A stretch of DNA of 63,621 nt, filler included, from Octopus bimaculoides (taxonomy: Eukaryota): the NCBI RefSeq assembly GCF_001194135.2. It is 5 parts of 5 records of this genome, joined end to end, with 100 filler letters (N's around TTAATTAATTAA, not from the genome) between each part and the next. Parts side by side here need not be neighbours in the genome. Positions count along the whole stretch, not along the records: positions 24,134 to 37,450 come from NC_069005.1; 4 more parts are not named here. One strand, given 5' to 3'. Position 1 is the first letter of the stretch. Each line of letters opens with the position of its first letter. The notes beneath the pieces are model-generated. The model had not been told where the DNA came from and made no database searches. It worked only from the letters and a program-made list of their open reading frames with translations. Positions 2,661-37,821 of this stretch are shown in pieces. The position numbers and the translations under genes are program-made.

Positions 2661-2872
2661 TTATCTGCACACCTATACATGCATACGCACGATAAACAAA
2701 TGTGTACATCAACCGATTCAGATAACCACAAACCTTGAAGAACTGTTATGACTTACAACAAAAGAGCCTTGCCAATATTAGCGACCAGATTGAAAGCCGC
2801 AAAGGGGGGAAAAAACAAACTTAAATAAACCTCCAAATAAGTACATACACATATACGTAGATGCATACAAAA

Positions 2873-2942
<70 letters not shown>

Positions 2943-2946
2943 GCAT

Positions 2947-2998
<52 letters not shown>

Positions 2999-4738
2999 GC
3001 TTACATATAAATACATACATAGACAAAACAGTCCACTCATACACGTATACACATCAGGACGCCCTTCCCCTGCCCATCACTCCCGGCTGCACTGGGCACC
3101 TGTCAAATTAAAACAACACCACTTCTACATTGCACATGGCCACCCACCTCCATTCCGATCCTCATTTCCCTGATTTCTCCCTCCCACCCAACCTCCTACG
3201 CTTTCCTCACCCCCACCCCCACCGTCTCTGTCTATGTAACAAAGGTTCTGCAACTGTACAAGAATGTGAAGTGGGGTGGGAGGAGACAAATAGCTTTGTG
3301 GTGGTGGTGGAGGAAGTGGTATTGATGTTTAGTGGTGATGGTGGTGGGAGGGTGGTTGCTCTAGGTGTGATGTGGATAGTGGTATATGGTGGTAATGGTG
3401 GTCCTGCAGTGGTAATGGTGATGAGGTAGGGTGATGGTGGTGGTGGTAGTAGTACTGGTGGTGACGGTGTTGGCGGTCATGGCAGAAATGATTCGGTGGT
3501 GGGGGTGATGTAGTGATGATGATGATGTGGTGGTGGTGATGGTTATTATAGTGGCTATGATGGTGGTGGTGGTAGTGGTTATAATGGTAGGTACAGTGAT
3601 GGTGATCACACAAAAGGTTAGAGTTGCGGTAATGGGGNNNNNNNNNNNNNNNNNNNNNNNNNNNNNNNNNNNNNNNNNNNNNNNNNNNNNNNNNNNNNNN
3701 NNNNNNNNNNNNNNNNNNNNNNNNNNNNNNNNNNNNNNNNNNNNNNNNNNNNNNNNNNNNNNNNNCAGGGGGCGGTTCAGGAAGTATGGTCCATGTTCCT
3801 TTAGTCTTTGTGGTGGTGGTGGTGGTGGTGTTTCTTGCCTTCCCTACTTCCTCCTCTCCCCTCCCCCTCTCATCCCAACACCCCACCACTTGCAAAGCCT
3901 CTTAGCACAAGTGTTAAAACTAAGTTGGCTGCCATCACCCCCACCCCACCCTCTGCCTCACATACTTAAACATGCAGCAACTCACATGCATGCAACTCAC
4001 ATGCAACATACAATTATGAGCCAAATGCCCCAACCACTAAGCCACATGCCTTCATTCATGAACACTTACACACACATGTATACAAACACACACAAATGTA
4101 CATTTACATACAGCAAAACACAGATGCAAGCATACATACAGAAAAGCACTTACATCCACACAATATATACCTTTTCACACCAGCACATGTGTATACATAC
4201 AAGCATACACACATACAAACAGTATACATGTAATCATTCTTTCTGCAATAAGCACAAGGCCTGAAATTTTGAGGGGAGGGGACAGTCGCTTACATTGAAG
4301 CCCAACGCACGACTGGTACTTATTTTATCCTGAAAGGCTGAAAGGCAAAGTCAATCTTGGTTAACGATTCTGCCAGCTCACTACCTTAGTACACATATAA
4401 TAATAAATTCAACGCACAAACTCACATAAAGAATCTTGCAAACCAAATCTCAAAATGAAATAAATTATATATACATTTATATAACCACACATGGGCCATT
4501 GACAATTTTCCTTCTTCTTTGGACATTTTCCTTTCTCCTTTCCAATGAAGAGCCATGCTCGAAACATTAAAAACTATCTCCTTTCACTGAGCATCAAACT
4601 AACATTGGTTTTTTTTTTTTTTCCTCTTTTCATTTTTTGAATTGTTTGTTCATTCAAATCGTCCAACTCATGCTAGCATGGAAAGCGGACGTTAAACAAT
4701 GATGATGATGATGATACATATATATATATATATATGCT

Positions 4739-4774
<36 letters not shown>

Positions 4775-5406
4775 CAAGTATAATGTTCTCTCTCTCTCTC
4801 TGTATATATATATGTGTGTGTGTGTGTGTGTATACACACACATACAGTCATGCATACAATATGTATGTACAATGCTATGCGATCTGTCAAACCAGCTGCT
4901 GCTGATGTATTTCTAAGTTGTCATCAAGTGGTCTCAGGACTACTACTGTTACTACTACTACTACTACTACTTTCACCTTTGCTTTTTTCCTTCCTTATAA
5001 CCACGACCATACCAAATCCTGTCTCCTACTTCTCCTGTTTCTCACCACCACCGCCGCCGCCACTGTCCTGCCTTAACTGCTGCTGGGCCTCAATGACTGC
5101 CTGTCTTCTTTCTACTTTGGTGGACCTGTATACCTTCTGTAATCTACCTGTGTGGGTCACCAGATCAGTTGACTATCAGCACCTGTACCAGTGACACACT
5201 ATAACTTGCTGTGCTCTCAGTCACACACACACACACACACACACGCACAAGCACACATGCAACACAAACCCCTCATCCATTCATATCGCAGTAGAGCAAA
5301 CATAATATATAAATACATGCATACAAACATATGTATATAGATAAACATATATAAATATATTTGCTCACATTATTATACATATTTATCTGTATATATTTTT
5401 GAAACA

Positions 5407-5448
<42 letters not shown>

Positions 5449-6058
5449 ATTGTATGTATGCATCCTCTTCCAAGTAAGTTTTATATATATATATAATATA
5501 TAGACGTAGAAAAAAGGAGGCAATATAGACTTTTATTTATCACATTTGTATTTTGATATATATACACACACACATACATACATACACACATACACATACA
5601 TTTTATTTATTCAAGGCGGAATTGTACATAATTACATATACAATGTTCAAAATTAATTGTCCACACTCAAACTGACATATCTATCTATCTATCCATCTAT
5701 ACACATACACACAGATTTACATGTATTTATATCTATTTATATATTTATTGTTTGTAATATATCTATATACACCATTTTTTTCTTCAACTTTTTAACACAA
5801 ATACATGCATACACACACACACACACACACACTTTTTCACACACAGAAACGCATATATATATATATAGATAGATCTGATATTCTAAGGCGAGGAAATTTT
5901 CATGTGGAAAGCTGTCATAGAAAAGAGAGTCTGGAATTAAATCTGATCTCTTTTGAAATTTTTGGAATTGTTAAAAAAAGTGGAATTGATATCTTAGTCA
6001 TATCTTGACATACAAGGCATTGACTCCGACTTATATACATCCATATTTATACATCTCT

Positions 6059-6089
<31 letters not shown>

Positions 6090-6227
6090 GGGGAGTAGGT
6101 GCCTGTTAGTGTATTCACACATGCGTACATACCCATGAGAGTGTACTCAATACAGTATATTAAGTGATATTTGAAACTAAAACTTAATTATTTCTACTCG
6201 GAGTTACTCTTTGCACACACACACACA

Positions 6228-6263
<36 letters not shown>

Positions 6264-6431
6264 CATTTCATGACATTTACAAAGTTTGGTGAGGATAAAG
6301 AACACATACACAAACAGAGCACTCATTTGCTCAGCTGTCCCCTATAAACAATCAGAATCAAAGGGACAGCAGTGTACACACATACCTCACCGTCCCCCAC
6401 CTCTCTCTCTAGCTGTTCCCTTTCTCTGTAA

Positions 6432-6469
<38 letters not shown>

Positions 6470-6823
6470 GAGAGACTATGCTGGAATGTTCTAATTTACA
6501 ATGGAGAAATTAAGGACTTTTAACCTCTTACTTTGGATTATCATAATTTGTAAGTTGATGACTTTTCCCCCCCCTATTTTAGTTGTTGTTGTTGTTTGTG
6601 TAATATGTGTATGTTTGTTAATGTTATTTAGTCCTGTTTAGCCCCTGGCCAGCCTCCATTGATCAAAGGCATTCTAGCTGTGATTGATCGTTCCTTGATT
6701 TTTAGGGATATCTGGTGCTATATTATGTAATGTGTTAAATGTGTCCGTTTTATCTTTCTTTTTATAAGACAACAGAATGTGAGTTCAGTGATGTTTAGCT
6801 GTTATTTCAATGTGCTTCTCTTT

Positions 6824-6858
<35 letters not shown>

Positions 6859-7007
6859 TGTGATAAACTTACTTTTGTCTGTGTTTGTATAACAGAAGAC
6901 TACGTTTATATACGTGTGCTTGTGTGTGCATGTGTGCATGTAGGTATGCATGTGTTATGATTGACTATACTTTGTGTGTGTATGTATGTTAAAGAAGAAA
7001 ACTTCAC

Positions 7008-7117
<110 letters not shown>

Positions 7118-7395
7118 TAATTGATGTTTACATTGAATATAACCTCCTTGTAGTGTTGCAAAAATCCGCATTTGCAGATCCTTCTTCTTCGTTGTTGTTG
7201 TTGTTGTTGCTGTATTAGTTGTTGTAGGATGTATAACAGATCTTGTTATTCTAAAGGTAACTTTTTTTCTTTCCTACAATAGTTGTTTTTGTTGTTGTTT
7301 TCAACACACAAATACTTCCTTTTGTTGTTGTTATTGTTGTATCTTCTCTCTGAGCGGTTTCTTTCACTCTCTCTTGCCATCTTTTTTTTCTCACC

Positions 7396-7472
<77 letters not shown>

Positions 7473-24089: not shown

Positions 24090-24264
24090 NNNNNNNNNNN
24101 NNNNNNNNNNNNNNNNNNNNNNNNNNNNNNNNNACCCAGAACCATGTGGTTCGTAAGCAAGCTACTTACCACACAGCCACTCCTACGCCTATATATATAT
24201 GTGTGTGTGTGAGTTTGCGTGTGTGTGTGTGTGTGTGTGTGTACATGTGCGTGCATGTGTGTGT

Positions 24265-24304
<40 letters not shown>

Positions 24305-24836
24305 CAGCCAAAATTTCGTGCATTACATCCAATAGGGCAATTCTGTTGACCAAAGTATGTATGTGTGTGTGTGTGAGTGTGTGTGCGTATGCGTTCGTGT
24401 TTGTGTGCGCGTGTGTTTATGTGTATGCGTATGTGTGTGTGTGTGTGCATCACAGCCAGAATTTCTCGCTTTTGATCCAAGAGTGCCATTCTGTTAACCA
24501 AAGTGTAACCAAGAATATAGCTGATCTGAAAGACGATAGCGTTGCGATACAGCTTCCCCCATTGCTTATAAACGCATGGTTTCACATTTTACTCCTGTCT
24601 ACTGCGGCGATGTATTTGACTACACAGAACCAAAATCTGATATCCGTCCCCTCAAATGCCTTTCAATAAGTATGTGGTGGAGCGTACTGAACTTATTTCA
24701 TTTCTATATGATATCCTTATAAAATGGCGGTGCATCTTATGCGAAAATGCGTTTTTTGTGCCTGTTAATGCGGTATTTGTGTTCATATTCGCAGATCACA
24801 GATGCTTAAACCCTGATGCTTTATCTCATTCTTTTT

Positions 24837-24870
<34 letters not shown>

Positions 24871-26253
24871 TATATATATATGTGCATACATACACCATAT
24901 ATGCATACATATATATGCACATACACACACAGAAATTGACACACACAAACACACATGTGTGTAAAGAAAGCCATCATGTGAGGCTTGCAAACTGACAGCC
25001 ATAAAAGGTTTCTTGTGAGTGTTTTTATGCGTGTGTGTACGCGTTCGTGTGTGTGTGTGTGTATGCGTGTGTGTGTGTGTATGCGTGTGTGTGTGTATGC
25101 GCGTGTGTGTGTTCGTGTGTAAGAAAGATGACAAAGGAATAAATGATTATCATATATATCTACGTGTGTGTGTGTGTGTCTGTGTGTGTGTGTGTGTAAA
25201 CACATTCACATGTATGATTGAAGGCGCGTGGCTTAGTGGTTAGGGCATTCAATTCACGATTGAAATCGGGGCAACCTTTCTGCCGCACCCTGTGAGTTTT
25301 GCGAGTTGCATGGTAACATCGCAAGTACCCTGATCGTACGAAAAAGAAGATAAAATAAAATGCACGTAGAGCACATTGGAAAGTGGTTGCCGTTAGGAAG
25401 GGCCTCTAGCCCTAGGAACCATGCCAAAGCAGACACTTGAGCAAGATGCAGAGCCATTGGAGCCATTGGAGCCATTGCGTCTTTTAACAAAATTCAGCAC
25501 ATGCCAGCATAGAACAATTGGACATGAAATGACGACGACAACAACGACGATGACGATGATGATAATGATGGCTAGGATGACGACGAAGACGATGATGATG
25601 ATGATGATGAGGAGGATGATGATGAGGAGGAGGAGGATGACGATGGCGATGATGACAACGACGATAACGATGATGATGTTGATGCAAAGTGAAAGTGAAA
25701 GTGAAATCAACTTCATAAAAAGCCTGTAACCTTAAAAAGCCAGCGACTTTTTGCTTTTGTAGGGGATTCCATACAAATGTAATGGTAATAAAGTACCACA
25801 CACACATATACACAAGGAAACACATACACACACACACACTCATACGCACACACGAGAAACACACACACTCTCTCTCTCTCTCTCTGACGCACATACACTC
25901 ATACGCACACACGAGAAACACACACACACACACACACTCTCTCTCTCTCTCTCTCTCTCCCACACACACACACACAGAAACAAANNNNNNNNNNCCCACA
26001 CACACACACACAGAAACAAACACAAATAACGTACAAACACACACATATACCACAGATGCACAAACATACACAACACCGCCAAATAAACACAAATAGACGC
26101 ACACACACACACACACGCAACCATACACACACAAATACACAAACACAGACACACAAAGACATACGCCCCACATATACATAACCTTTTATATAAGCACACA
26201 TACACACATACAGCTTTCTCTATCCAATGCTACCAAGCATTTTGTCAGAAACG

Positions 26254-26810
26254 CTAAGTCGGTGAACTAGCAGAGGCGTTAACATGCCAGGCAAAATGCT
26301 TAGCCGAGGTCGACTTTACCTTTCGGGGTCGATTAAATAAGTACCATTTAAGCAATGGGATCGATGTAATCGACTTAATCCCTTTGCCTGTCCTTGTTTG
26401 TCCCTCTGTGTTTAGTCCCTTGTGGGCAATGAAGAAATAAATATTTCCCTCTGAAGGGCGGAGAGCTGGCAGAAACGTTAGCACGCCGGGCGAAATGCTT
26501 AGGGTTTTTCGTCTGTCTNNNNNNNNNNTGGTCTGACTTTACGGTCAGGGTTCAAATTCCGTTGAGCTCGACCTTGCCTTTCGTCCTTTCGGGATCGATA
26601 AAATAAGCACCAGTTGAACACTGGGGTCGATGTAATCGATTTATGCCCTGCTTCGTCTTTACGTTCTGAGTTCAAATTCCGCCAAGGTCGACTTTGCAGT
26701 TCAGCCTGTCCGAATCGATAAAATTAAGTACCAGTTACATACTGGGTCGATGTAATGAACCGTAGTCCCTCTCCCGAAACTGCTGGCCTTGTGCCAAAAT
26801 TCGAAATCAA
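26254..26810 (+). mobile_element. Cluster of SINE family A copies with CpGs intact
   Basis: GAGCTGGCAGAAACGTTAGCACGCCGGGCGAAATGC heads; repeated B box and core. Confidence 0.85.
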
Positions 26811-27214
26811 TATTCCCCTTGGTTCATTAGCACTGGATTTCAAAAGCTATCTTCTCACGCGCATGAGTTCCTATATATATATATGTGAGTATATGTGTGT
26901 GTGTGTATTAGTGTGTGTGTGTATGTGTGTGTGTTTGTGTGTGTTTGTGTGCGCATGCGTGCGTATCAGAGCGCCGTATTCCTATTGATGTAATATATTT
27001 ATATGGCCACCAAAAGAAACCCCATAATTTTCGCGCGCGCTACAAACGCAACAGCAGCGATTTTGTAAAGCTTCTTTCTCTTTCAGGTTTAAAGTATGGA
27101 AACTCCACAGATACAAAATTCACTGCTTTTCTGATCGTTAACCGCTAATAATTGCAGTTTTCAATGCAATCATCAATTGGTTCAATCGAAAAAATTAAAA
27201 ATAAAATCTTTTGT

Positions 27215-27314
27215 ATCTTCATTTCTCCAACGTTCACTGTTTTTCTTTGCTCTCCTGTCTTTCTGGCAATCTTTTACTATTTCCTTCCTACATCCCTTTC
27301 CACCGCTCTTTCTC

Positions 27315-27346
<32 letters not shown>

Positions 27347-27745
27347 ATTTTTTCTGTCTTTTTCTCTTTCTTTTTCCCTTCTCCTTCCTTTCCTTGTTTC
27401 TTGTTTTTCTTTCATTATTTTTTTTCTTTTTTCTTTCCTTTCGTTCTGTTGCTATTCAGTCTTTCTTCCTTCGCCTCATCCTTCCCTTCTTCCTCCCTCC
27501 CTTTCTTTCTTTCTTTCTTTCTTTTTCGCTTTCCTTATTTCTGTCTGTCTTTCTTCTCTCTTTCTTTTCCACTTTTCCTTCTTTCTTTCTTTGATTTGTG
27601 TTTCTCTTTTCTTTCACAAGTTCTTCTTTCATTCTTCTTTCTTTCTTTTTTTTTGTTTCTTTGTTTTCCTTTCTTTCCTTGCTTCTTTCTTTCTTCCTCC
27701 CTTTCTTTCTTTTATTTCACCTTTCATTCTCTCCAAAATTCCATA
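27215..27745. repeat. ~530-bp pyrimidine-rich (TTTC/TTC)n low-complexity tract
   Basis: Direct reading; it explains the Phe/Leu/Ser-rich ORFs at 27152-27763. Confidence 0.9.
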
Positions 27746-27809
27746 TACCTATCTTTAAGGTGATATAACTAGGTTCCTCTTGAAATCTATAGATCTCAGC
27801 CTCTCAGTT

Positions 27810-27840
<31 letters not shown>

Positions 27841-28009
27841 CTCTCTCTTCATATACATATATGTATATGCGTGCTCACACACGCACACACGCACACACAT
27901 ACACATACGAACACATGAGTCTCTTTGATTTTATAATTCTCTCTGTAACTCTCCTCTCTTTAATACCCCGCACCTCTCTCTCCCATATGTGTGTGTATTT
28001 ATGTGTGTA

Positions 28010-28049
<40 letters not shown>

Positions 28050-28147
28050 CACATGCAAATACACACAAACATATCTTTGATTTTACAATTTTCGTGTATC
28101 CTAGTTCTCTTTAACTCCCCTCATCTCTCTTTCTCTGTGTGTGTGTA

Positions 28148-28197
<50 letters not shown>

Positions 28198-28437
28198 TAT
28201 ATATATATTTTAATTCGCACACACATACGTATATATATGTGTGTGTATATATACACATACACATACATATACTTATACATACATATACATACAAACACAT
28301 CCTTTTTAACTATAACACACTAACTCGAGATAAACTCCTTCTCCCAAACTCTATACAACTCTCCGTCTCTCATTCTCTACATGTCTCTCTTGAATTCCGC
28401 ATCTCACTTATGATGCATGTCTCTTTTTCTGTTCGTT

Positions 28438-28496
<59 letters not shown>

Positions 28497-29476
28497 NNNN
28501 NNNNNNNNNNNNNNNNNNNNNNNNNNNNNNNNNNNNNNNNNNNNNNNNNNNNNNNNNNNNNNNNNNNNNNNNNNNNNNNNNNNNNNNNNNNNNNNNNNNN
28601 NNNNNNNNNNNNNNNNNNNNNNNNNNNNNNNNNNNNNNNNNNNNNNNNNNNNNNNNNNNNNNNNNNNNNNNNNNNNNNNNNNNNNNNNNNNNNNNNNNNN
28701 NNNNNNNNNNNNNNNNNNNNNNNNNNNNNNNNNNNNNNNNNNNNNNNNNNNNNNNNNNNNNNNNNNNNNNNNNNNNNNNNNNNNNNNNNNNNNNNNNNNN
28801 NNNNNNNNNNNNNNNNNNNNNNNNNNNNNNNNNNNNNNNNNNNNNNNNNNNNNNNNNNNNNNNNNNNNNNNNNNNNNNNNNNNNNNNNNNNNNNNNNNNN
28901 NNNNNNNNNNNNNNNNNNNNNNNNNNNNNNNNNNNNNNNNNNNNNNNNNNNNNNNNNNNNNNGTTTTTTTCTTTAACGCTTAAAATATTTCAACATGTTT
29001 GTTGCTAATGTATACAAGGGAACGTGTGAAAAACAAAATAGAAATTTTGAAAGAAGTTTCTATAAAAATAGTTTCTAAAACATCGAATGGCTATGGGGGT
29101 TCACCAGAATAAATCAGAAATCGAAAGGTTCTGTAAGTAAAAAAAAAATAAATAATGGCTGATAATAACTACCCTAGATCAGAAACGATATTGTTCAATG
29201 TGTCTATTCTTCCTTAACTCTTTTACTGCGGAAATCAGATATATCTATTCAAAGTTCCATTATCCTTACCTGAAACAGCGGAAAGAGGTTTTATTTACCA
29301 ATCTATCTTTCGTTGATGAATATCATGTCTGAAGCTATTTTCTGTTGAGATATGCCCAAACTTATTGAGACACTAATACCTGTTCATTGATTTCACTGGC
29401 ATCTCTCGTGCTGCGAACTAACTAGTCATCCTTTTGTAATGAACGTGTTTTAAGATTGCGGTGAATACCTCTAGAT

Positions 29477-29548
29477 CAGAGGTTCCCAAACTTTTCACAG
29501 TGGTTCCCAACCCTTTTATTTAAATGACTTTCCCCACGGACCCCCTTT
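29477..29548 (+). mobile_element. hAT-Charlie-like left end(s), rest lost in the gap
   Basis: CTCTAGAT (matches NTCTAGAN) followed by CAGAGGTTCCCAAAC, then a second terminus CAGTGGTTCCCAACC about 20 bp in. Confidence 0.6.
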
Positions 29549-30447
29549 AATATGATTATCCTTATATATATATNNNNNNNNNNNNNNNNNNNNNNNNNNN
29601 NNNNNNNNNNNNNNNNNNNNNNNNNNNNNNNNNNNNNNNNNNNNNNNNNNNNNNNNNNNNNNNNNNNNNNNNNNNNNNNNNNNNNNNNNNNNNNNNNNNN
29701 NNNNNNNNNNNNNNNNNNNNNNNNNNNNNNNNNNNNNNNNNNNNNNNNNNNNNNNNNNNNNNNNNNNNNNNNNNNNNNNNNNNNNNNNNNNNNNNNNNNN
29801 NNNNNNNNNNNNNNNNNNNNNNNNNNNNNNNNNNNNNNNNNNNNNNNNNNNNNNNNNNNNNNNNNNNNNNNNNNNNNNNNNNNNNNNNNNNNNNNNNNNN
29901 NNNNNNNNNNNNNNNNNNNNNNNNNNNNNNNNNNNNNNNNNNNNNNNNNNNNNNNNNNNNNNNNNNNNNNNNNNNNNNNNNNNNNNNNNNNNNNNNNNNN
30001 NNNNNNNNNNNNNNNNNNNNNNNNNNNNNNNNNNNNNNNNNNNNNNNNNNNNNNNNNNNNNNNNNNNNNNNNNNNNNNNNNNNNNNNNNNNNNNNNNNNN
30101 NNNNNNNNNNNNNNNNNNNNNNNNNNNNNNNNNNNNNNNNNNNNNNNNNNNNNNNNNNNNNNNNNNNNNNNNNNNNNNNNNNNNNNNNNNNNNNNNNNNN
30201 NNNNNNNNNNNNNNNNNNNNNNNNNNNNNNNNNNNNNNNNNNTAGATATAAGAGCGAATTTGTTCATATCGGGTTGTGAATGACAGACGCTGTGTTAGTA
30301 GCTGACAAAATGAACGCAGAAACGCACGCATCTTAACGCACCAATCAAAACTTTAACAGCCTAGGGCGTTTTCACACGCCATCTTGGGAGTGAGGTTTTT
30401 TTTTCCTGTAAGAATTTCCTCATTGGGAAATCTTATATCCGAATACA

Positions 30448-30501
<54 letters not shown>

Positions 30502-30970
30502 GATATATGTCGTCAATCAAAAATACTTGTCGAACATCTGACAAAAGAAATGCTTTACATCAAATCTTCGTAATTTTGTAAAATTATGCCGATATCTACA
30601 TCACAGTTGTTCCTTTATTCCTTGACAACTCATCTCATTTGAAGGTCTCAACATGTTTGTTTTGCAATAACATATTTAGAAACATCTTACCAGTCTGCAT
30701 TGACTCTATCGCATCGAACTTCCCACCATCGTTTCCTCTCATCACTTGTAATTCACACATGTCAATGGTAAAAATCCCGAATGTCAGTTATTTGCCAACG
30801 TCTGTCCTACGTCTTTCGCAAATCTTTATTGCAATAATATATATCCACGCCATTATGTATCTCAAAAGTAAACAAACCCCACCCATCCTCGTTATACCGT
30901 TTAATTTGTGCAGATACTTCCTGGTGTTTCAAACTTATTAATGCATCATTCAAAAGACATGTCTGCTGAA

Positions 30971-31232
30971 TACTAAATTAAGTTCAAATATGAAATAGCA
31001 GCAACGCTGGTGCAATCAACATTATCGACATCATTTACTTAACGTAAAATCTCCTTGTATTTGCCTCTAGGCTACCATTAGGCGTGGTGAAGATTACTTG
31101 TATACTAAATACTAAATTAAGTTCAAATATGAAATAGAAGCAGCGCTAGTGTAATAAATATTATCGACCACATATTCTTAACGTATATAGTTTGTGCATT
31201 TGCCTGTAGGCTGCCCTTTGGCGATGTGGAGA
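30971..31232. repeat. Diverged tandem duplication, period ~139 bp
   Basis: TACTAAATTAAGTTCAAATATGAAATAG starts at both 30971 and 31110, and similarity continues for ~120 bp. Confidence 0.85.
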
Positions 31233-32259
31233 ACGCTCTCTGAAAGTGCCGGATGTTAAGACACCTGAAAACCGAAGTTGCAGCCTAGCGGCGAAAACTG
31301 AAGCCTTACACGTTAAGTATATGAGGTCGATAATGTTTACTAAATTAGATATTTAAATGTATCAAATGACATTAATTCGCCCCGAGAAATATCTTTTCGA
31401 AATAGAGGTGTCTATTTGATTATAAGATTCTGAGTATAGCGTTTCTGAGGAGACGCGGACTCCCTAACCACTGGGCTGCAGTGGACCAGTGCCTGGCCAC
31501 ACAGGGATGCCTTTAAAAATTGTTTTCTATTTTATTGGGTCTCGCAGTCTACACAGCGTTTTTGCATTATGCGATTATCTTATATGTATTATCGAATATG
31601 TATTATATACATAATATAATTATTATATATGTAAGCATAGATGTGAAGGCACATGGCTCAGTTGTTAGAGCGTGTCAGTCTTACGTCCTCTATTTAGATT
31701 ATCTGCCTCTCCGTTTTCACCCCTAGTTAACCCAAGTTACCAGTATCTCAGATTTCACTTCTACTTGGGAGGACACGGAGCAATAGCATATCATATCATA
31801 TCATATCAAATCATATCTCTAATAATAGATCAAAGTTTCCTTTAAATATAAACTCTCCTTTAAATATATCTATATCAATCAAAATTGTATGATATACATA
31901 ATATATGTCATATATTTTATATGTATTTGTATTATATTCTATATAATTGTATATATATATATACACCTAAATATTCCGTATATGTATTTTATATATAAAT
32001 ATATATATATATACATATANNNNNNNNNNNNNNNNNNNNNNNNNNNNNNNNNNNNNNNNNNNNNNNNNNNNNNNNNNNNNNNNNNNNNNNNNNNNNNNNN
32101 NNNNNNNNNNNNNNNNNNNNNNNNNNNNNNNNNNNNNNNNNNNNNNNNNNNNNNNNNNNNNNNNNNNNNNNNNNNNNNNNNNNNNNNNNNNNNNNNNNNN
32201 NNNNNNNNNNNNNNNNNNNNNNNNNNNNNNNNNNNNNNNNNNNNNNNNNNNNNNNNNNN

Positions 32260-32298
<39 letters not shown>

Positions 32299-33335
32299 AC
32301 AGTCTGCCCTCACCCTGCCGCATTGATTACTTGTTTTATTGATTGTGTGTATGCAGATCTGTTGAATGAAGTGGCCGGTAGCCAATCAAATGTCGACAAT
32401 GCCTGTCATACATAATATATTGTGGACATTTATTATTGATTCGGTTGGACTTTGCTCTTGACTTCGTTCTTCTTTGTCTTTTGTAGTTTGCAGTTGTTGT
32501 TGTTGTTGTTGTTGTTTTTCTTTTGATGGTGTTAAAATCTATATTCTGTCATTTTTAGACAGTTCACTGACACTTCAATGTAATGTACTGCACTGCTGCG
32601 GTGATTTTTCACTCGATACATGCTTCGAACTGTTATATATTCTCATAGATATATATACATATAGTATTGAGACTGTCGCTTTGGTAATGGAGTTAATATA
32701 TGCAAAGTAAAGTCGTCACTTGGCACAGGTTGACCTTAAACTCTGTTGCATATGCGCACCAACTTATCCGGTTCTCGTTCACTTTCATCGTTTACAACTG
32801 GGCAAGAAAGTGAAGTGTGTAAAGTGTGGTCGTTTCGAAAAGGGGACCAGGTTACAACTTCGCAAGATCTCCTTGATTGTGTCGAGGAAGATACTCTTTT
32901 ACTCTTTTACTTGTTCCAGTCATTTGACTGCAGCCATGCTGGAGCACCGCCTTTATAGTCGAGCAAATCGACCCCAGGACTTATTCTTTGTAAGCCTAGT
33001 ACTTATTCTATCGGTCCTATTTGCCGAACCGCTAAGTTACGGGGACGTAAACACACCAGCATCGGTTGTCAAGCAATGTTGCGGGGACCAGGGGACAACT
33101 GATGAAGGGAATGTTCTTAATGTTGCATGTCTCATTTCTCTGTTTGTTTTTCGATGTTCGAAAAAATGTTCGTTTTCTATGTTTTTGTTTTTTGTTCTCG
33201 TTTCTCATTCTGTCTACGTTTTTCTGATGTCCTGTACCCATATATGCATGTATATATACATATATATGTAGGTATGTACATATATGCATATATTTATATA
33301 TAATTATATATTATTTATATTATATTATATTATAT

Positions 33336-33371
<36 letters not shown>

Positions 33372-33789
33372 NNNNNNNNNNNNNNNNNNNNNNNNNNNNN
33401 NNNNNNNNNNNNNNNNNNNNNNNNNNNNNNNNNNNNNNNNNNNNNNNNNNNNNNNNNNNNNNNNNNNNNNNNNNNNNNNNNNNNNNNNNNNNNNNNNATA
33501 TATATAGTGAGCGAGAGAGTGAGAGAGAGAGTGAGAAATATATATGTTTACGTATATAAATATCATTAATCCTCATCATGTTGAAATGATATACGCTAAG
33601 TGAAGTATTCATAACTACCTGGAGCCGCCGCCATAGCATGGCTTTATTCTCTCACACCAATTCTATCTTTGAGTAAATCAATCATTCATAGTAAATTTGC
33701 TTTTCTATTCACATAGAGACTGTCATCAACAATCGTATAAAATCGTACACTCGCTCTGGTTACCAACCGCATAGTGTCCATAGTCATGT

Positions 33790-34075
33790 TTCGTAAATGA
33801 GCTGTGATTATGATTCAATATTGTCTATGGTTTTGAGTTACATACAAGCTGTTGATATGACTTATAAAGAGGATATGGATGCGAGTTACATAGAAAATGT
33901 GCTTGTGAGTCATATACATAGTCTGTGGTTATGAGTCACAAATAACCTGGGCTTACGAACCGTATGGCTGTTGTGGTTCTGAATCACATGCGTAAGCTTT
34001 GTTTTTTTAGACACGCATAAGCTGTGTCTATGAGTCACATCAACAAGCTTTGGTAATCTAGGGCTTCTGGTTTCG
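33790..34075. repeat. Degenerate ~26-bp tandem repeat with a TGAGTCA core
   Basis: Units resembling TGTGGTTATGAGTCACATACAAGC; perfect TGAGTCA at 33906, 33932 and 34031. Confidence 0.65.
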
Positions 34076-34584
34076 AGTAACACACAGGCCGTACAAATTT
34101 GTTTTAAAACGTGTCATAGGCGGTAGGATTGCGGGTGCGATAGGTCGCTTGGAGTCACCTGAGTCGTGTCGTGTCGCTGACTCAAAGTGACCATCTCTGA
34201 TTGGTTTATTTTATATTTTGATTAGTAGAGGTCACAGCCGTGAAGATTCACTGCTATAAGCCGGAGCATGAGTGTAAAAAGAAATATTACAATGGCTCGA
34301 GGCTCGCAGCAGCAGGATACAGTCAAAAGCGAAAGGAGGATCTGTATTCAGGGGTCTCAATTGAAACTTAATAAGGAAAAAATATGTCTCGTTGAGGTTT
34401 AATTTTCATTCATCCATTCAAAATTAAAAAAGGAATCCAGGGAAACGGATTGGCAGAACTGTCAGATGGTCGGACCGGATCCTTTTGTAATCAATTTTGC
34501 ATACAGGGTTCAAATTCAGCTTTAACTCAGTTAACTGATAGCTTTAATCCATAATCCAGTTTAATAGCACTACAAAACTTTTAA

Positions 34585-34615
<31 letters not shown>

Positions 34616-34756
34616 TTGCTTTGGTCAGTAAGTGTCGTTTCCTATTTGCTCTTGTATAGAAACGAAACTTTGCTTTTTTCACCTGGACATCAATATTTTG
34701 AAACTGACCTATTTTCCGTTAACATTTCAAGCATTCAGTGCTGAGTTTCTGAAGCA

Positions 34757-34833
34757 GAATTTTCTAGATCTTTCTAGAGATTTCGAGAACGTTCAAGAAA
34801 TTTCTAAAAGTTTCAAGAATTTCTAGAACATTC
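34757..34833. promoter_or_regulatory. Extended heat-shock element (HSE) array
   Basis: GAAttTTCtaGATctTTCtaGAGatTTCgaGAAcgTTCaaGAAatTTCtaAAAgtTTCaaGAA (13 in-register pentamers, 10 perfect), then TTCtaGAAcaTTC offset by 1 nt. Confidence 0.75.
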
Positions 34834-34850
34834 TGGTAACTTAGATGACA

Positions 34851-34887
34851 GTATAAATACAGGAATTGGAAGCTCAGCAGTTCAGTT
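34851..34887 (+). promoter_or_regulatory. TATA box plus initiator core promoter
   Basis: GTATAAATA at 34851-34859 and TCAGTT at 34882-34887; the Inr A at 34884 is 32 nt from the first T of TATA. Confidence 0.65.
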
Positions 34888-34904
34888 TACTTCTAACTGT
34901 CAAA

Positions 34905-35048
34905 ATGGAGACTAGCTTGAGGAAAGCAAAGCTGGAAGGAAATATTAGCAATTCTTCACATTTTTCTAGGGGTGCTTTTATCAAGAAATCAAAGGAAATC
35001 ACTATTTTCCCCTCCAAACTCTGCTTTTGTGACATGTTTCGAAACTGA
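34905..35048 (+). CDS. Hypothetical 47-aa ORF downstream of the HSE promoter
   Basis: CAAAATGG start context; METSLRKAKLEGNISNSSHFSRGAFIKKSKEITIFPSKLCFCDMFRN. No recognised homology, and its end runs into a duplicated segment. Confidence 0.15.
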   Translation: METSLRKAKLEGNISNSSHFSRGAFIKKSKEITIFPSKLCFCDMFRN

Positions 35049-35665
35049 TCTATTTTCCATTACATTTCAGACAGATCCAGTGCTGAGTTGCTGAAGCAGA
35101 AATATCATTATAGCAAATATTCTGCTCAATACCACAGATTTGCTTGTCAGTTGCTTGACCATGTTCCTTAGTGGCTGACAATATGTACGTCTCTGATCAT
35201 GAGCAGGAGTAGTGAAGGAGTGCCACAGCCATGTGCTGAGAGAGATTTTGAGGGGTTTGAATAAATATAAGAATAATCACATGCGCAGTTGCAGAACACT
35301 GAATAGTACAAGAGTAACAAGTTTGATTTTCTCGATCTAAATGGAAAATTCTATGAAAATATTTGTAATACCATCAGGTAGGATTTCAAGTAAAACACGC
35401 TTAATGTCATTTCTCTGGCACGAAATCAAGGAAACATCGAATCGAATCAATCTATTTTAGTAAACCTGGAAGGATAAGGTGATGGTGATGACCTCGGCAG
35501 GAAGCGAACTCAGAACGTTAATGGAGAAAAATCCATAATCTTGTGTAGCGTAGCAGATGTGAGGTTTCTAAGGAAATAGTTTTCTAATAAATATAGAGAT
35601 CGTCATACATAGTGAATGACCACACAAACATACACAGTAGTTTACACAGAGGAATATATATTTAA

Positions 35666-35717
<52 letters not shown>

Positions 35718-36512
35718 ACACATACACAAACATACACACACAGAGGCAACACATACACACAAATAGTATACGGGGCGTGCTGTAATGTGAGACAATACTT
35801 TCAGTTTTAATAGTTTCACTATGTGCATGTGTATATAGAGATAGTGAAACAATTAATACTGCAGCTATTAAAAGCCANNNNNNNNNNNNNNNNNNNNNNN
35901 NNNNNNNNNNNNNNNNNNNNNNNNNNNNNNNNNNNNNNNNNNNNNNNNNNNNNNNNNNNNNNNNNNNNNNNNNNNNNNNNNNNNNNNNNNNNNNNNNNNN
36001 NNNNNNNNNNNNNNNNNNNNNNNNNNNNNNNNNNNNNNNNNNNNNNNNNNNNNNNNNNNNNNNNNNNNNNNNNNNNNNNNNNNNNNNNNNNNNNNNNNNN
36101 NNNNNNNNNNNNNNNNNNNNNNNNNNNNNNNNNNNNNNNNNNNNNNNNNNNNNNNNNNNNNNNNNNNNNNNNNNNNNNNNNNNNNNNNNNNNNNNNNNNN
36201 NNNNNNNNNNNNNNNNNNNNNNNNNNNNNNNNNNNNNNNNNNNNNNNNNNNNNNNNNNNNNNNNNNNNNNNNNNNNNNNNNNNNNNNNNNNNNNNNNNNN
36301 NNNNNNNNNNNNNNNNNNNNNNNNNNNNNNNNNNNNNNNNNNNNNNNNNNNNNNNNAATGAGTACTAATCTTACAAAGAACAAGACCTGGGGTCGATTTA
36401 GTTCGACTAAAGGTGGTGCTCCAGCATGGCTGCAGTCAAATGACTGAAATAAAAAAGAGAGTAAAAGAGAATATATATGTATGTATATATACATATATAT
36501 ATACATACATTT

Positions 36513-36569
<57 letters not shown>

Positions 36570-37334
36570 CACTACTCTGTATCTGCTTGCATACTTGCTT
36601 GTATGTGTGCTTGTCTGTAATTTAATACAGCCAAGTGCATAATGGGAAGACTAAGATGTTTCCATTATTTTGTCCAACTCCTGTATATATCGAAGACGTA
36701 CTTGTCTGCCATGTAAATTTTGCGTATTATACATGTGTGTGTGTGTGTATGTAGCTCTGTATGCATTTATGTATGTACGAATGTACTTATATATGTATTT
36801 ATGCATGTGTTTGTATATAGATGACTTCTTTATCTGTTAGGATTGTAAATTTAGCAAGTGTATGATAAATCAAATAAAGTACGTTAATGCGTTCCTTACC
36901 TACATTTATCATCAACTCTGTCGGCCGTATAGAATTCGAGATGTTTATAACTCTGAAAATTTGCAAAACCGCCAAACCGTCAGCAAAAATATTTTTGTTG
37001 GAAAATCTGAAAGTCTGCCATAATGACATTGGAGTTTTATGAGAATGGCTGCTGGCTAACAGTTCCGTTAATTAATTAATTGATTAATTTATTAATTATT
37101 CATACAAACCAATGTATAGCAATGAAAATTGTTCCTCTAGCCATCCGAAAGAACCATAGCCTTGAACAAAGTTATGTAATAACATCGATTCATATTTTAG
37201 CCTGATTACGAATCACACACAGACACACATGTACACACACACACACACACACATATATACATATATATATATTTATACATACATTTATACATGTATGATC
37301 CGGTCACACATATATGTGTGTATGATGTGTGTGT

Positions 37335-37375
<41 letters not shown>

Positions 37376-37821
37376 CGCATGCGTGTGGATAAACATGCAT
37401 ACATATATGTACGCGCGCATATATATATATATACATATATATACATGTGTNNNNNNNNNNNNNNNNNNNNNNNNNNNNNNNNNNNNNNNNNNNNTTAATT
37501 AATTAANNNNNNNNNNNNNNNNNNNNNNNNNNNNNNNNNNNNNNNNNNNNATGTATATATATATAATTGATATGTAATTGTAAGATCCAAGAGTCTAGGT
37601 GTAGGAAGCTAGTAACTTTCGATCAGTCCGTGATAGGTATAAAAAACAATTTTAGAAAGTACTATAATTTGACATCAAAGGTTGCAGAATTTTCCCCATA
37701 TTGAAGTTTGATATGCTGAAAAATGTGTTACAGCTCACTGTTAGCAGCGGGGCTTGCCATGTATGTGAATAAAAAATCAAATGAAGGGAATGAGGCAGAT
37801 AAAATCCAAACTACATATGTT

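What the first reader, a model, noticed from the sequence alone, without database searches (positions are those of the whole stretch)
34757..35048. Orphan heat-shock promoter: very long HSE array, TATA and Inr, but no HSP gene
Thirteen alternating nGAAn/nTTCn pentamers in register (10 perfect) plus a perfect 3-unit HSE end 18 nt before TATAAATA, with TCAGTT at canonical distance and a CAAAATGG start 21 nt later. This is the architecture of the Drosophila hsp70 proximal promoter, with far more than the three pentamers HSF needs. Downstream there is only a 47-aa ORF with no recognised homology. Options: a heat-induced lncRNA or micropeptide, a beheaded HSP gene copy, or an HSF-binding cassette carried by a mobile element.
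Basis: partly seen in the sequence, partly recalled or inferred. Interest (0 to 1): 0.75.

Follow-up and report, generated by a model that had tools for sequence, protein, structure and literature searches.

The report
Heat-shock-type promoter without visible chaperone gene
A real and statistically striking heat-shock-factor binding array sits at textbook distance from a TATA box and start site in repeat-rich animal DNA, but no chaperone gene is visible within the short, gap-ridden stretch available, so "orphan" is unproven and the design itself is a known kind.

Summary
Sixteen alternating nGAAn/nTTCn pentamers lie at 34756-34834: 13 in register (10 perfect), a 1-nt slip, then a perfect 3-unit HSE. 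TATAAATA follows 17 nt later, TCAGTT puts A+1 at 34884 (TATA at -32), and caaaATGg at +22 opens a 47-aa ORF. Three-unit HSEs are expected 0.05-0.12 times in the window; all 8 hits are here. The TATA-Inr pair occurs only here. The pentamer logo is A-G-A-A-n with a near-random fifth column, which is HSF's specificity rather than a plain slipped 10-mer.

My best reading is an HSF-responsive Pol II promoter, live or recently live, firing rightward. Its product is unknown. No Pfam relic appears in 2.5 kb downstream or 1.3 kb upstream. The 47-aa ORF has no homologue among 1.84 billion representatives.

"Orphan" is not shown. The piece ends 2.5 kb downstream, a 480-N gap lies 1 kb downstream, and donor-like sites (35378, 35479) could splice to distant exons.

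New here: a ~90-nt direct repeat (34665-34759 / 35016-35101) brackets the cassette, pointing to a duplication or insertion.

No related locus could be retrieved, because the collections hold no comparable animal DNA. HSE promoters outside HSP genes are already known (hsr-omega, Helitron HSEs, ONSEN, satellite III).

Verdict: new member of a known kind, moderate interest.

The parts
34665..34759 (+). Direct repeat X, copy A. It sits immediately upstream of the HSE array and runs into it: its 3' end TTTCTGAAGCAGAA already contains HSE-like pentamers.
   Evidence: Gapped local alignment to 35016-35101 scores 91, against 21.8 +/- 2.7 (max 34) for shuffles. The ungapped core 34693-34759 vs 35034-35101 is 84% identical, E=1.4e-14. 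Also families D7 and D9.
34756..34820 (.). Distal HSE array: 13 alternating nGAAn/nTTCn pentamers in one register, 10 with a perfect core.
   Evidence: 3-unit HSE patterns are enriched over shuffles. TRF reports period 10 and 20.
34820..34834 (.). Proximal perfect 3-unit HSE (TTTCT AGAAC ATTCT), shifted 1 nt relative to the distal array. It lies at -64 to -50 relative to the inferred start.
34852..34859 (+). TATA box TATAAATA, beginning at -32.
34882..34887 (+). Initiator-like TCAGTT. The inferred transcription start is A at 34884.
   Evidence: This is the only TATAAA-N22-28-TCAGTY match in the window. Start-site use is inferred, not shown.
34905..35048 (+). 47-aa ORF (METSLRKAKLEGNISNSS...), with its ATG in caaaATGg context at +22. 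It ends inside repeat copy X'.
   Evidence: No homologue and not in the 15-billion-protein collection. It is probably not a conserved coding gene.
35016..35101 (+). Direct repeat X', copy B. It contains an acceptor-like site, tttccattacatttCAG|ACAG, at 35071.
35260..35265 (+). First AATAAA downstream of the inferred start (+377). It is a possible 3' end for a ~400-nt unspliced transcript.
   Evidence: pattern only.
35375..35383 (+). Best donor-like site downstream, CAG|GTAGGA (7 of 9 to consensus). It is a possible end of a ~495-nt first exon. A second donor-like site, AAG|GTGATG, is at 35479.
   Evidence: pattern only.

Best explanation
This is an RNA polymerase II promoter of the heat-shock type, either active or active until recently. 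Inferred mechanism: under proteotoxic stress, HSF trimers bind cooperatively to the 16 contiguous inverted nGAAn units, which give room for about five trimers. The perfect proximal site lies at -64 to -50. The bound HSF activates a TATA (-32) and Inr core promoter, so transcription starts near 34884 and runs rightward. The transcript does not encode a recognisable chaperone within the 2.5 kb that can be seen. I judge it most likely a non-coding or merely short-ORF-bearing RNA. It could be a stand-alone heat-inducible transcript of about 400 nt ending after AATAAA at 35260, or the untranslated first exon of a gene spliced from 35378 or 35479 to exons outside the piece. The ~90-nt direct repeat on both sides shows that the cassette reached its present context through a local duplication or insertion event. 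Shown: the motifs, their spacing, their improbability by chance, the HSF-like logo, the flanking repeat, and the absence of detectable coding homology. Inferred: HSF binding, start site, inducibility and the nature of the product.
For: The array and spacing were read directly. 3-unit HSE patterns: 4+4 observed against 0.05 and 0.12 expected, all at this site. TATAAA-N22-28-TCAGTY is unique in the window, lies directly 3' of the array, and is expected 0.09 times window-wide. The pentamer logo is A13/16, G15/16, A16/16, A14/16, then a near-random fifth column at 0.3 bit. Core mismatches are 3/48 against 8/16 in the fifth column, Fisher p=3e-4. Against a 20-nt-period consensus the contrast is still p=0.019. 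The variation therefore sits where HSF does not read the DNA, which a freshly slipped minisatellite would not show. No TATA-like element was seen on reading the opposite strand to the left of the array (reading), so the design looks unidirectional. There is no HSP or other Pfam relic downstream or upstream. HSF-driven promoters for non-HSP and non-coding products are established elsewhere (PMC6765114, PMC6927752).
Against: There are no expression, binding or comparative data of any kind. Not one related locus could be retrieved. Three core changes in 48 is what neutral decay since the X/X' duplication would predict (expected 2.3), so present-day constraint is not demonstrated. The array also scores as a tandem repeat. 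The putative transcript has no unusual structure (z=-0.35) and no Rfam family. Inr and TATA consensus rules come from flies and mammals, not from this presumably molluscan lineage.
Confidence: 0.55

Rival explanations
1. The promoter is not orphan. It drives a bona fide chaperone or stress gene whose coding exons lie in the 480-N gap or beyond the piece's edge, with 34884-35377 as an untranslated first exon.
For: Donor-like sites CAG|GTAGGA (35378) and AAG|GTGATG (35479) lie downstream. The piece ends 2.5 kb downstream and has a gap at 35878-36357. The region is a gap-ridden, repeat-rich draft in which genes can have long introns.
Against: By my own knowledge, strongly inducible hsp70 and small-HSP genes are typically intronless and directly abut their promoter. 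No HSP-like relic is seen at E<=1 in any forward frame on either side of the gap. A 480-nt gap cannot hold an hsp70 gene and barely a small HSP. An ATG in good context at +22, followed by a stop after 47 codons, would act as an upstream ORF.
Confidence: 0.25
2. The cassette is cargo or part of a mobile or dispersed repeat (Helitron-like, LTR-like or another element). It spreads HSF sites and a promoter around the genome, and this locus is one copy.
For: A ~90-nt direct repeat brackets the cassette. The locus is surrounded by interspersed repeats, including an inverted pair at 32891-33007 / 36357-36472. There is precedent for TE-borne tandem HSEs (PMC6927752). An unrelated metagenome contig shows HSE repeats plus TATAAATA next to copia-like RT ORFs.
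Against: There is no second copy of the cassette in 13 kb. No RT, transposase or Rep-helicase relic was found in the frames scanned around the cassette, which covered only 33498-37450 and not every frame of that stretch. No terminal inverted repeats or LTR pair were found. The cassette lies in an uninterrupted 2.4-kb contig of a short-read-type draft, which is weak evidence against a young high-copy family. A 90-nt target duplication is far too long for ordinary transposition. The inverted pair is most simply two copies of an abundant interspersed repeat.
Confidence: 0.2
3. It is a dead relic: a once-functional heat-shock promoter left behind after its gene was deleted, rearranged away or duplicated incompletely, and now decaying neutrally.
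For: Three of 16 pentamers are already damaged and there is a 1-nt register slip. The number of core changes fits neutral decay since the flanking duplication. The flanking direct repeat shows that a rearrangement happened here. No gene is visible.
Against: No HSP coding remnant is present at all. TATA, Inr and the proximal perfect HSE are all intact. Four overlapping perfect 3-unit HSEs remain, which should still bind HSF.
Confidence: 0.2
4. It is a chance product: a 10- or 20-nt minisatellite (AGAAnTTTCT)n made by replication slippage that merely resembles HSEs, with a coincidental TATA and Inr.
For: TRF reports period 10 and 20 arrays. The genome is extremely rich in simple repeats. The 3' end of repeat X contains a seed-like TTTCTGAAGCAGAA.
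Against: Variation is concentrated in the position HSF ignores (p=3e-4, or p=0.019 with a 20-nt unit). The only TATA-N-Inr composite in 37.5 kb lies 17 nt from the array, and the joint probability of that placement is of order 1e-4 or less (inference).
Confidence: 0.05

Closest known systems
Drosophila hsp70 proximal promoter (HSE1/HSE2 - TATA - Inr); comparison from my own knowledge
   Same: Inverted nGAAn pentamers with a perfect 3-unit site centred near -57. TATA near -32. A TCAGTT-type initiator. Unidirectional design.
   Different: There is one contiguous 16-pentamer array instead of several separate 3-4-unit HSEs. The sequence bears no resemblance to the fly promoter as I recall it from memory (not aligned here). 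The leader is 21 nt instead of a ~240-nt A-rich one. No HSP70 reading frame follows.
Heat-inducible non-coding genes with HSE promoters: Drosophila hsr-omega (own knowledge); C. elegans HSF-1-dependent ncRNAs, miR-239 and pseudogene dct-10 (PMC6765114)
   Same: An HSE-bearing Pol II promoter whose product is not a chaperone. hsr-omega also carries a tiny non-conserved ORF.
   Different: No sequence homology. No downstream tandem repeat block as in hsr-omega. Inducibility here is untested. The hairpin at 35794-35869 is far below the threshold of any miRNA family (29.9 bits against a gathering score of 97).
Helitron-borne tandem HSEs in Caenorhabditis (PMC6927752)
   Same: Overlapping tandem HSEs located outside HSP genes, able to confer HSF-1 binding and heat inducibility on whatever lies nearby.
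   Different: Helitron ends and insertion site were not searched for, and no other copy was found in the piece. Here a complete TATA and Inr core promoter accompanies the array. The lineage is different.
Heat-activated LTR retrotransposons such as ONSEN/ATCOPIA78 (own knowledge); compare the HSE repeats plus TATAAATA beside copia-like ORFs in contig L001
   Same: An HSE cluster followed by TATA, forming a self-contained stress-inducible promoter outside host chaperone genes.
   Different: No LTR pair and no gag-pol relic. A primer-binding site was looked for only by eye, not with a tool. L001 is not homologous: it matched a generic pattern, and with a different spacer from the window.
Human satellite III / HSF1 nuclear stress body repeats (own knowledge)
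   Same: A repeated GAA-containing array bound by HSF that yields non-coding RNA on heat shock.
   Different: Satellite III is a megabase-scale GGAAT satellite without a defined TATA and Inr. Here the array is 79 nt long with a precise core promoter.

Membership tests
HSF-dependent (heat-shock) promoter | At least three contiguous, alternately oriented nGAAn pentamers (NGAANNTTCNNGAAN) | tested here: met
   16 pentamers, 13 of them perfect. There are 4+4 perfect 3-unit matches against 0.05 and 0.12 expected.
HSF-dependent (heat-shock) promoter | HSEs placed just upstream of a core promoter (TATA about 30 nt before an initiator) | tested here: met
   The proximal HSE ends 17 nt before TATAAATA. 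TATA is at -32 from the A of TCAGTT. This composite is unique in the window.
HSF-dependent (heat-shock) promoter | HSF occupancy and heat-inducible initiation | not testable with these tools
   No expression or binding data are available, and the source organism is not identified by any tool.
HSF-dependent (heat-shock) promoter | A chaperone gene (HSP70, HSP90, small HSP or DnaJ) downstream | tested here: inconclusive
   No Pfam match at E<=1 in the forward frames of 34884-35877 and 36358-37450. The 480-N gap and the sequence beyond 37450 are unseen.
Truncated or pseudogenised HSP gene copy | Recognisable remnants of an HSP coding sequence behind the promoter | tested here: not met
   One search found none. 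The 47/60-aa ORF has no homologue.
LTR retrotransposon (LTR or solo LTR) | A second LTR copy, or gag/pol remnants | tested here: not met
   The only local repeat of the region is the ~90-nt X/X' pair. No RT, integrase or gag appears in Pfam.
LTR retrotransposon (LTR or solo LTR) | TG..CA ends with a 4-6-nt target duplication | not tested
   I did not run this search. My rough estimate is about 1-2 chance solutions in this interval, so a single copy cannot discriminate.
Helitron | 5'-TC and 3' hairpin-CTRR ends inserted at A|T; multiple genomic copies; Rep/helicase in autonomous members | not tested
   Boundaries cannot be defined from a single copy. No Rep or helicase relic was found. No genome is available in which to count copies.
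Plain minisatellite (slippage product) | Near-identical units with differences spread evenly over the unit | tested here: not met
   Unit identity is only 68-74%. Differences are concentrated in the HSF-neutral column (p=3e-4 and p=0.019).
Conserved micropeptide gene | Homologues of the short ORF in other genomes or transcriptomes | tested here: not met
   0 hits at E<=0.001 among 1.84 billion representatives. No word-sharing candidate among 5.8 billion clusters.

The most novel reading that the evidence does not exclude
This is a lineage-restricted, strongly heat-inducible gene that makes a long non-coding RNA or a 47-aa peptide rather than a chaperone. It is driven by an unusually long 'super-HSE' of 16 pentamers (about five HSF trimers). 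That would make it a functional analogue of Drosophila hsr-omega in, I suspect, a cephalopod mollusc.
Probability: 0.2. Interest if true: 0.55.

Novelty: new member of a known kind. Interest (0 to 1): 0.35.

Why it matters
If the promoter is active, it would mark a non-chaperone branch of the heat-shock response in a poorly studied animal lineage. It would also supply a compact (~130-nt), very strong natural heat-inducible promoter, potentially useful for inducible transgenes in that lineage. If it proves to be one copy of a dispersed family, it would be another case of repeats distributing HSF sites and rewiring stress-responsive transcription, as Helitrons do in nematodes. If it simply belongs to a gene beyond the gap, it is ordinary promoter annotation.

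Tried and rejected
**Homologues of the ORF**
- Word-index search with the 60-aa version: no candidate.
- Exhaustive phmmer of the 47-aa ORF against 1.84 billion representatives: 0 hits.

**Reaching the same locus in public assemblies**
- Exact look-up of 10 local ORFs: none is in the collection.

**Organism identification**
- A 96-aa translation of an interspersed repeat gave no hit.
- Calling the source an octopus-like cephalopod rests only on my recollection of its interspersed repeats.

**DNA pattern scans for other copies**
- Repeat X in metagenome contigs: 0.
- HSE-TATA pattern in metagenome contigs: I miscounted the spacer (N17 instead of N15), so this scan could not have found a true copy. 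It hit one unrelated contig, L001.
- Corrected pattern in GTDB genomes and IMG/VR: 0.
- These collections hold essentially no animal DNA, so the negatives say little.

**RNA**
- Rfam and tRNA scans found nothing at gathering score.
- The only weak hit was a palindromic hairpin to mir-5879, rejected as a member at 29.9 bits against a gathering score of 97.
- The putative transcript is no more structured than shuffles.

**Repeat structure**
- A tandem duplication of the whole ~342-nt unit is rejected, because the sequence after X' does not align with the cassette.

**Other checks**
- The bacterial promoter and terminator scan is irrelevant to this DNA.
- From memory, the sequence matches neither the Drosophila hsp70 promoter used in vectors nor synthetic multimerised HSE promoters, so I do not think it is a transgene or vector fragment.
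- No paper in the library combines heat shock elements, transposable elements and cephalopods.

Full report
**Context**

The piece (24134-37450) is eukaryotic draft sequence. It has five long N gaps, very dense microsatellites and several interspersed SINE-like repeats. Rfam and tRNA scans find nothing at family thresholds. No long non-repetitive ORF is present. From memory, the interspersed repeats resemble those of octopus genomes. No tool confirmed this (one search found nothing), so the organism is only suspected.

**The observation**

Reading 34750-34900 in five registers gives the following:

- Thirteen alternating pentamers lie at 34756-34820. Ten have a perfect GAA or TTC core; AGATC, AGAGA and AAAAG are imperfect.
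- After a one-base slip comes a perfect TTTCT-AGAAC-ATTCT at 34820-34834.
- TATAAATA is at 34852-34859.
- TCAGTT is at 34882-34887, so A+1 = 34884 and TATA begins at -32.
- caaaATGg is at 34905 and opens a 47-codon ORF whose stop ends at 35048.

The chance controls are clear:

- Both orientations of the 3-unit HSE pattern occur four times, all within 34782-34833. Shuffles predict 0.05 and 0.12.
- The composite TATAAA-N22-28-TCAGTY occurs once in 37.5 kb, at this place, with 0.09 expected for the entire window.
- Landing 17 nt from the array by chance is therefore of order 1e-4 or less (inference).

**Minisatellite or binding-site array?**

Tandem Repeats Finder reports the array as period 10 (68% matches) or period 20 (74%), so slippage had to be considered.

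I oriented all 16 pentamers the same way. The column counts are A13, G15, A16, A14, then a fifth column that is almost random at 0.3 bit. This is the aGAAn specificity of HSF.

- Mismatches to the column consensus are 3/48 in the core against 8/16 in the fifth column (Fisher p=3e-4).
- Allowing a 20-nt founding unit weakens the contrast to 3/48 against 5/16, but it persists (p=0.019).
- A young slipped repeat decaying neutrally would not put its differences in the one position the protein ignores.

This does not prove present-day selection. Three core changes is about what neutral decay since the flanking duplication predicts (expected 2.3).

The cassette is bracketed by a direct repeat:

- 34693-34759 and 35034-35101 are 84% identical (E=1.4e-14).
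- A gapped alignment extends the pair to 34665-34759 and 35016-35101. It scores 91 against 21.8 +/- 2.7 for shuffles.

The upstream copy runs straight into the first pentamers. The downstream copy contains the ORF's stop codon and an acceptor-like tttccattacatttCAG|ACAG.

The sequence after the second copy does not align with the cassette, so this is not a simple tandem duplication of the whole ~342-nt unit. The repeat is far too long to be an ordinary transposon target duplication. It does show that a local duplication or insertion event created the present arrangement. No other copy of the cassette or of X exists in the piece.

**What lies downstream**

- Stop-masked translations were scanned for the three forward frames of 34884-35877 and 36358-37450 and the three reverse frames of 33498-34760. 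They give no Pfam match at E<=1 apart from a sub-threshold DUF hit at 13 bits against a cut-off of 26.
- There is therefore no hsp70, hsp90, small-HSP or DnaJ relic, and no transposase or reverse transcriptase.
- The 60-aa and 47-aa versions of the ORF have no homologue in the word-indexed 5.8-billion-cluster database or among 1.84 billion representatives read exhaustively by HMMER.
- Between the inferred start and 35377 there is no donor-like site of 7/9 or better. The first ones are CAG|GTAGGA at 35378 and AAG|GTGATG at 35479.
- AATAAA occurs at 35260 and 35586.
- The putative transcript folds no better than shuffles (z=-0.35).

Two transcript models are compatible with this: an unspliced RNA of about 400 nt, or a ~495-nt untranslated first exon spliced to something outside the piece.

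**Why 'orphan' is not established**

Only 2.5 kb downstream is available, and 480 nt of it are N. The assembly is fragmentary.

An hsp70 gene cannot hide in the gap, and a small HSP could only barely. A multi-exon HSF target gene further downstream cannot be excluded.

**Attempts to bring in related sequences all failed**

The collections on hand do not contain comparable animal DNA.

- Ten local ORFs are absent from the 15-billion-protein collection.
- The X pattern has no match in metagenome contigs.
- The corrected promoter pattern has none in GTDB genomes or IMG/VR.
- One scan used a wrong spacer, which was my error. It returned an unrelated contig (L001) in which HSE-like repeats and TATAAATA lie next to copia-like RT ORFs. 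That is a convergent example, not a relative.

**Interpretation**

The most economical reading is a genuine heat-shock-type Pol II promoter, alive or recently alive. HSF trimers would bind cooperatively to an unusually long array and drive a TATA and Inr core promoter rightward from about 34884. I put this at 0.55. The binding, the start site and the inducibility are inferences.

The rivals are:

- A spliced chaperone or stress gene beyond the gap or edge (0.25).
- A cassette belonging to a dispersed or mobile repeat (0.2).
- A neutrally decaying relic (0.2).
- A chance minisatellite (0.05).

These overlap in part. A mobile cassette or a 5' exon would still be a working HSF promoter.

**Comparison with what is known**

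In function the locus resembles the Drosophila hsp70 proximal promoter. That has a proximal HSE near -57, TATA near -32 and a TCAGTT initiator (my own knowledge).

HSE promoters that do not drive chaperones are also established:

- hsr-omega (own knowledge).
- HSF-1-dependent ncRNAs, miRNAs and pseudogenes in C. elegans (PMC6765114).
- Tandem HSEs carried by Helitrons that rewire the nematode heat-shock response (PMC6927752).
- ONSEN LTRs and human satellite III (own knowledge).

Membership in the class 'HSF-dependent promoter' is met for the two sequence criteria and untestable for the two functional ones. Membership in LTR retrotransposon, plain minisatellite, HSP pseudogene or conserved micropeptide classes was tested and not met. 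Helitron features were not tested, because boundaries cannot be defined from one copy.

**Verdict**

The feature is real and well described, and its architecture is convincing. Its kind is known and its claimed orphan status is unproven. It is a new member of a known kind, with interest 0.35.

The most novel reading still open is a lineage-restricted heat-inducible lncRNA or micropeptide gene under a 'super-HSE'. I give it about 0.2.

Noticed in passing
window 32891-33007 (+) and 36357-36472 (-): Two copies of an interspersed repeat (86% identical over 118 nt) lie in inverted orientation with matching outer ends. They bracket the 3.35-kb segment that contains the HSE cassette. The right copy is cut by the N gap. 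They are probably two independent copies of an abundant SINE-like repeat rather than transposon termini, and I saw no convincing target duplication.
   Followed up: partly
window 35794-35869 (both strands): An imperfect palindromic hairpin with a 10-bp perfect stem, GTTTCACTAT/ATAGTGAAAC, folds with z about -2.5. It gives a weak Rfam hit to mir-5879 (29.9 bits against a gathering score of 97), so it is not a family member. It lies about 910 nt downstream of the inferred start, at the edge of the gap.
   Followed up: partly
window 26319-26383, 26537-26649, 26657-26756: Three adjacent copies of a SINE-like repeat (79-83% identical), with tRNA-like B-box-like 'GGTTCAAATTCC' motifs. A degenerate fragment of the same kind lies at about 34440-34560, followed by a (TTA)11 microsatellite at 34581-34615, just upstream of repeat X.
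   Followed up: no
window 30957-31093 and 31096-31232: A local tandem duplication of 137 nt (79% identical).
   Followed up: no
window 24134-24190: The piece starts inside a repeat ('acccagaaccatgtggttcgtaagcaagctacttaccacacagccactcc'). From memory, I associate this with a very abundant octopus interspersed element. It is the only basis for my guess at the organism, and no tool verified it (one search found nothing).
   Followed up: partly
window 25530-25685: A long (GAT/GAC/GAG)n trinucleotide tract would read as poly-Asp/Glu or poly-Met/Thr in open frames. It is a microsatellite, not a gene.
   Followed up: no
L001 7740-7959 (metagenome contig ERZ1034375 NODE-531): An unrelated contig ends in three to four blocks of TTCTAGAAnnTTCTAGA HSE-like repeats, partly within a ~75-nt tandem duplication, followed by TATAAATA. 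The minus strand upstream carries a copia-like RT ORF (4786-7401) and a second RT-like ORF (2843-4681). This is a convergent HSE+TATA cassette in a retroelement-rich context.
   Followed up: partly
window 34629-34634: A perfect donor-consensus GTAAGT (tcaG|GTAAGT-like: ggtcaGTAAGTg) lies 125 nt upstream of the HSE array on the + strand. The same spot also reads as an acceptor (T-rich tract + CAG). Its significance is unknown.
   Followed up: no
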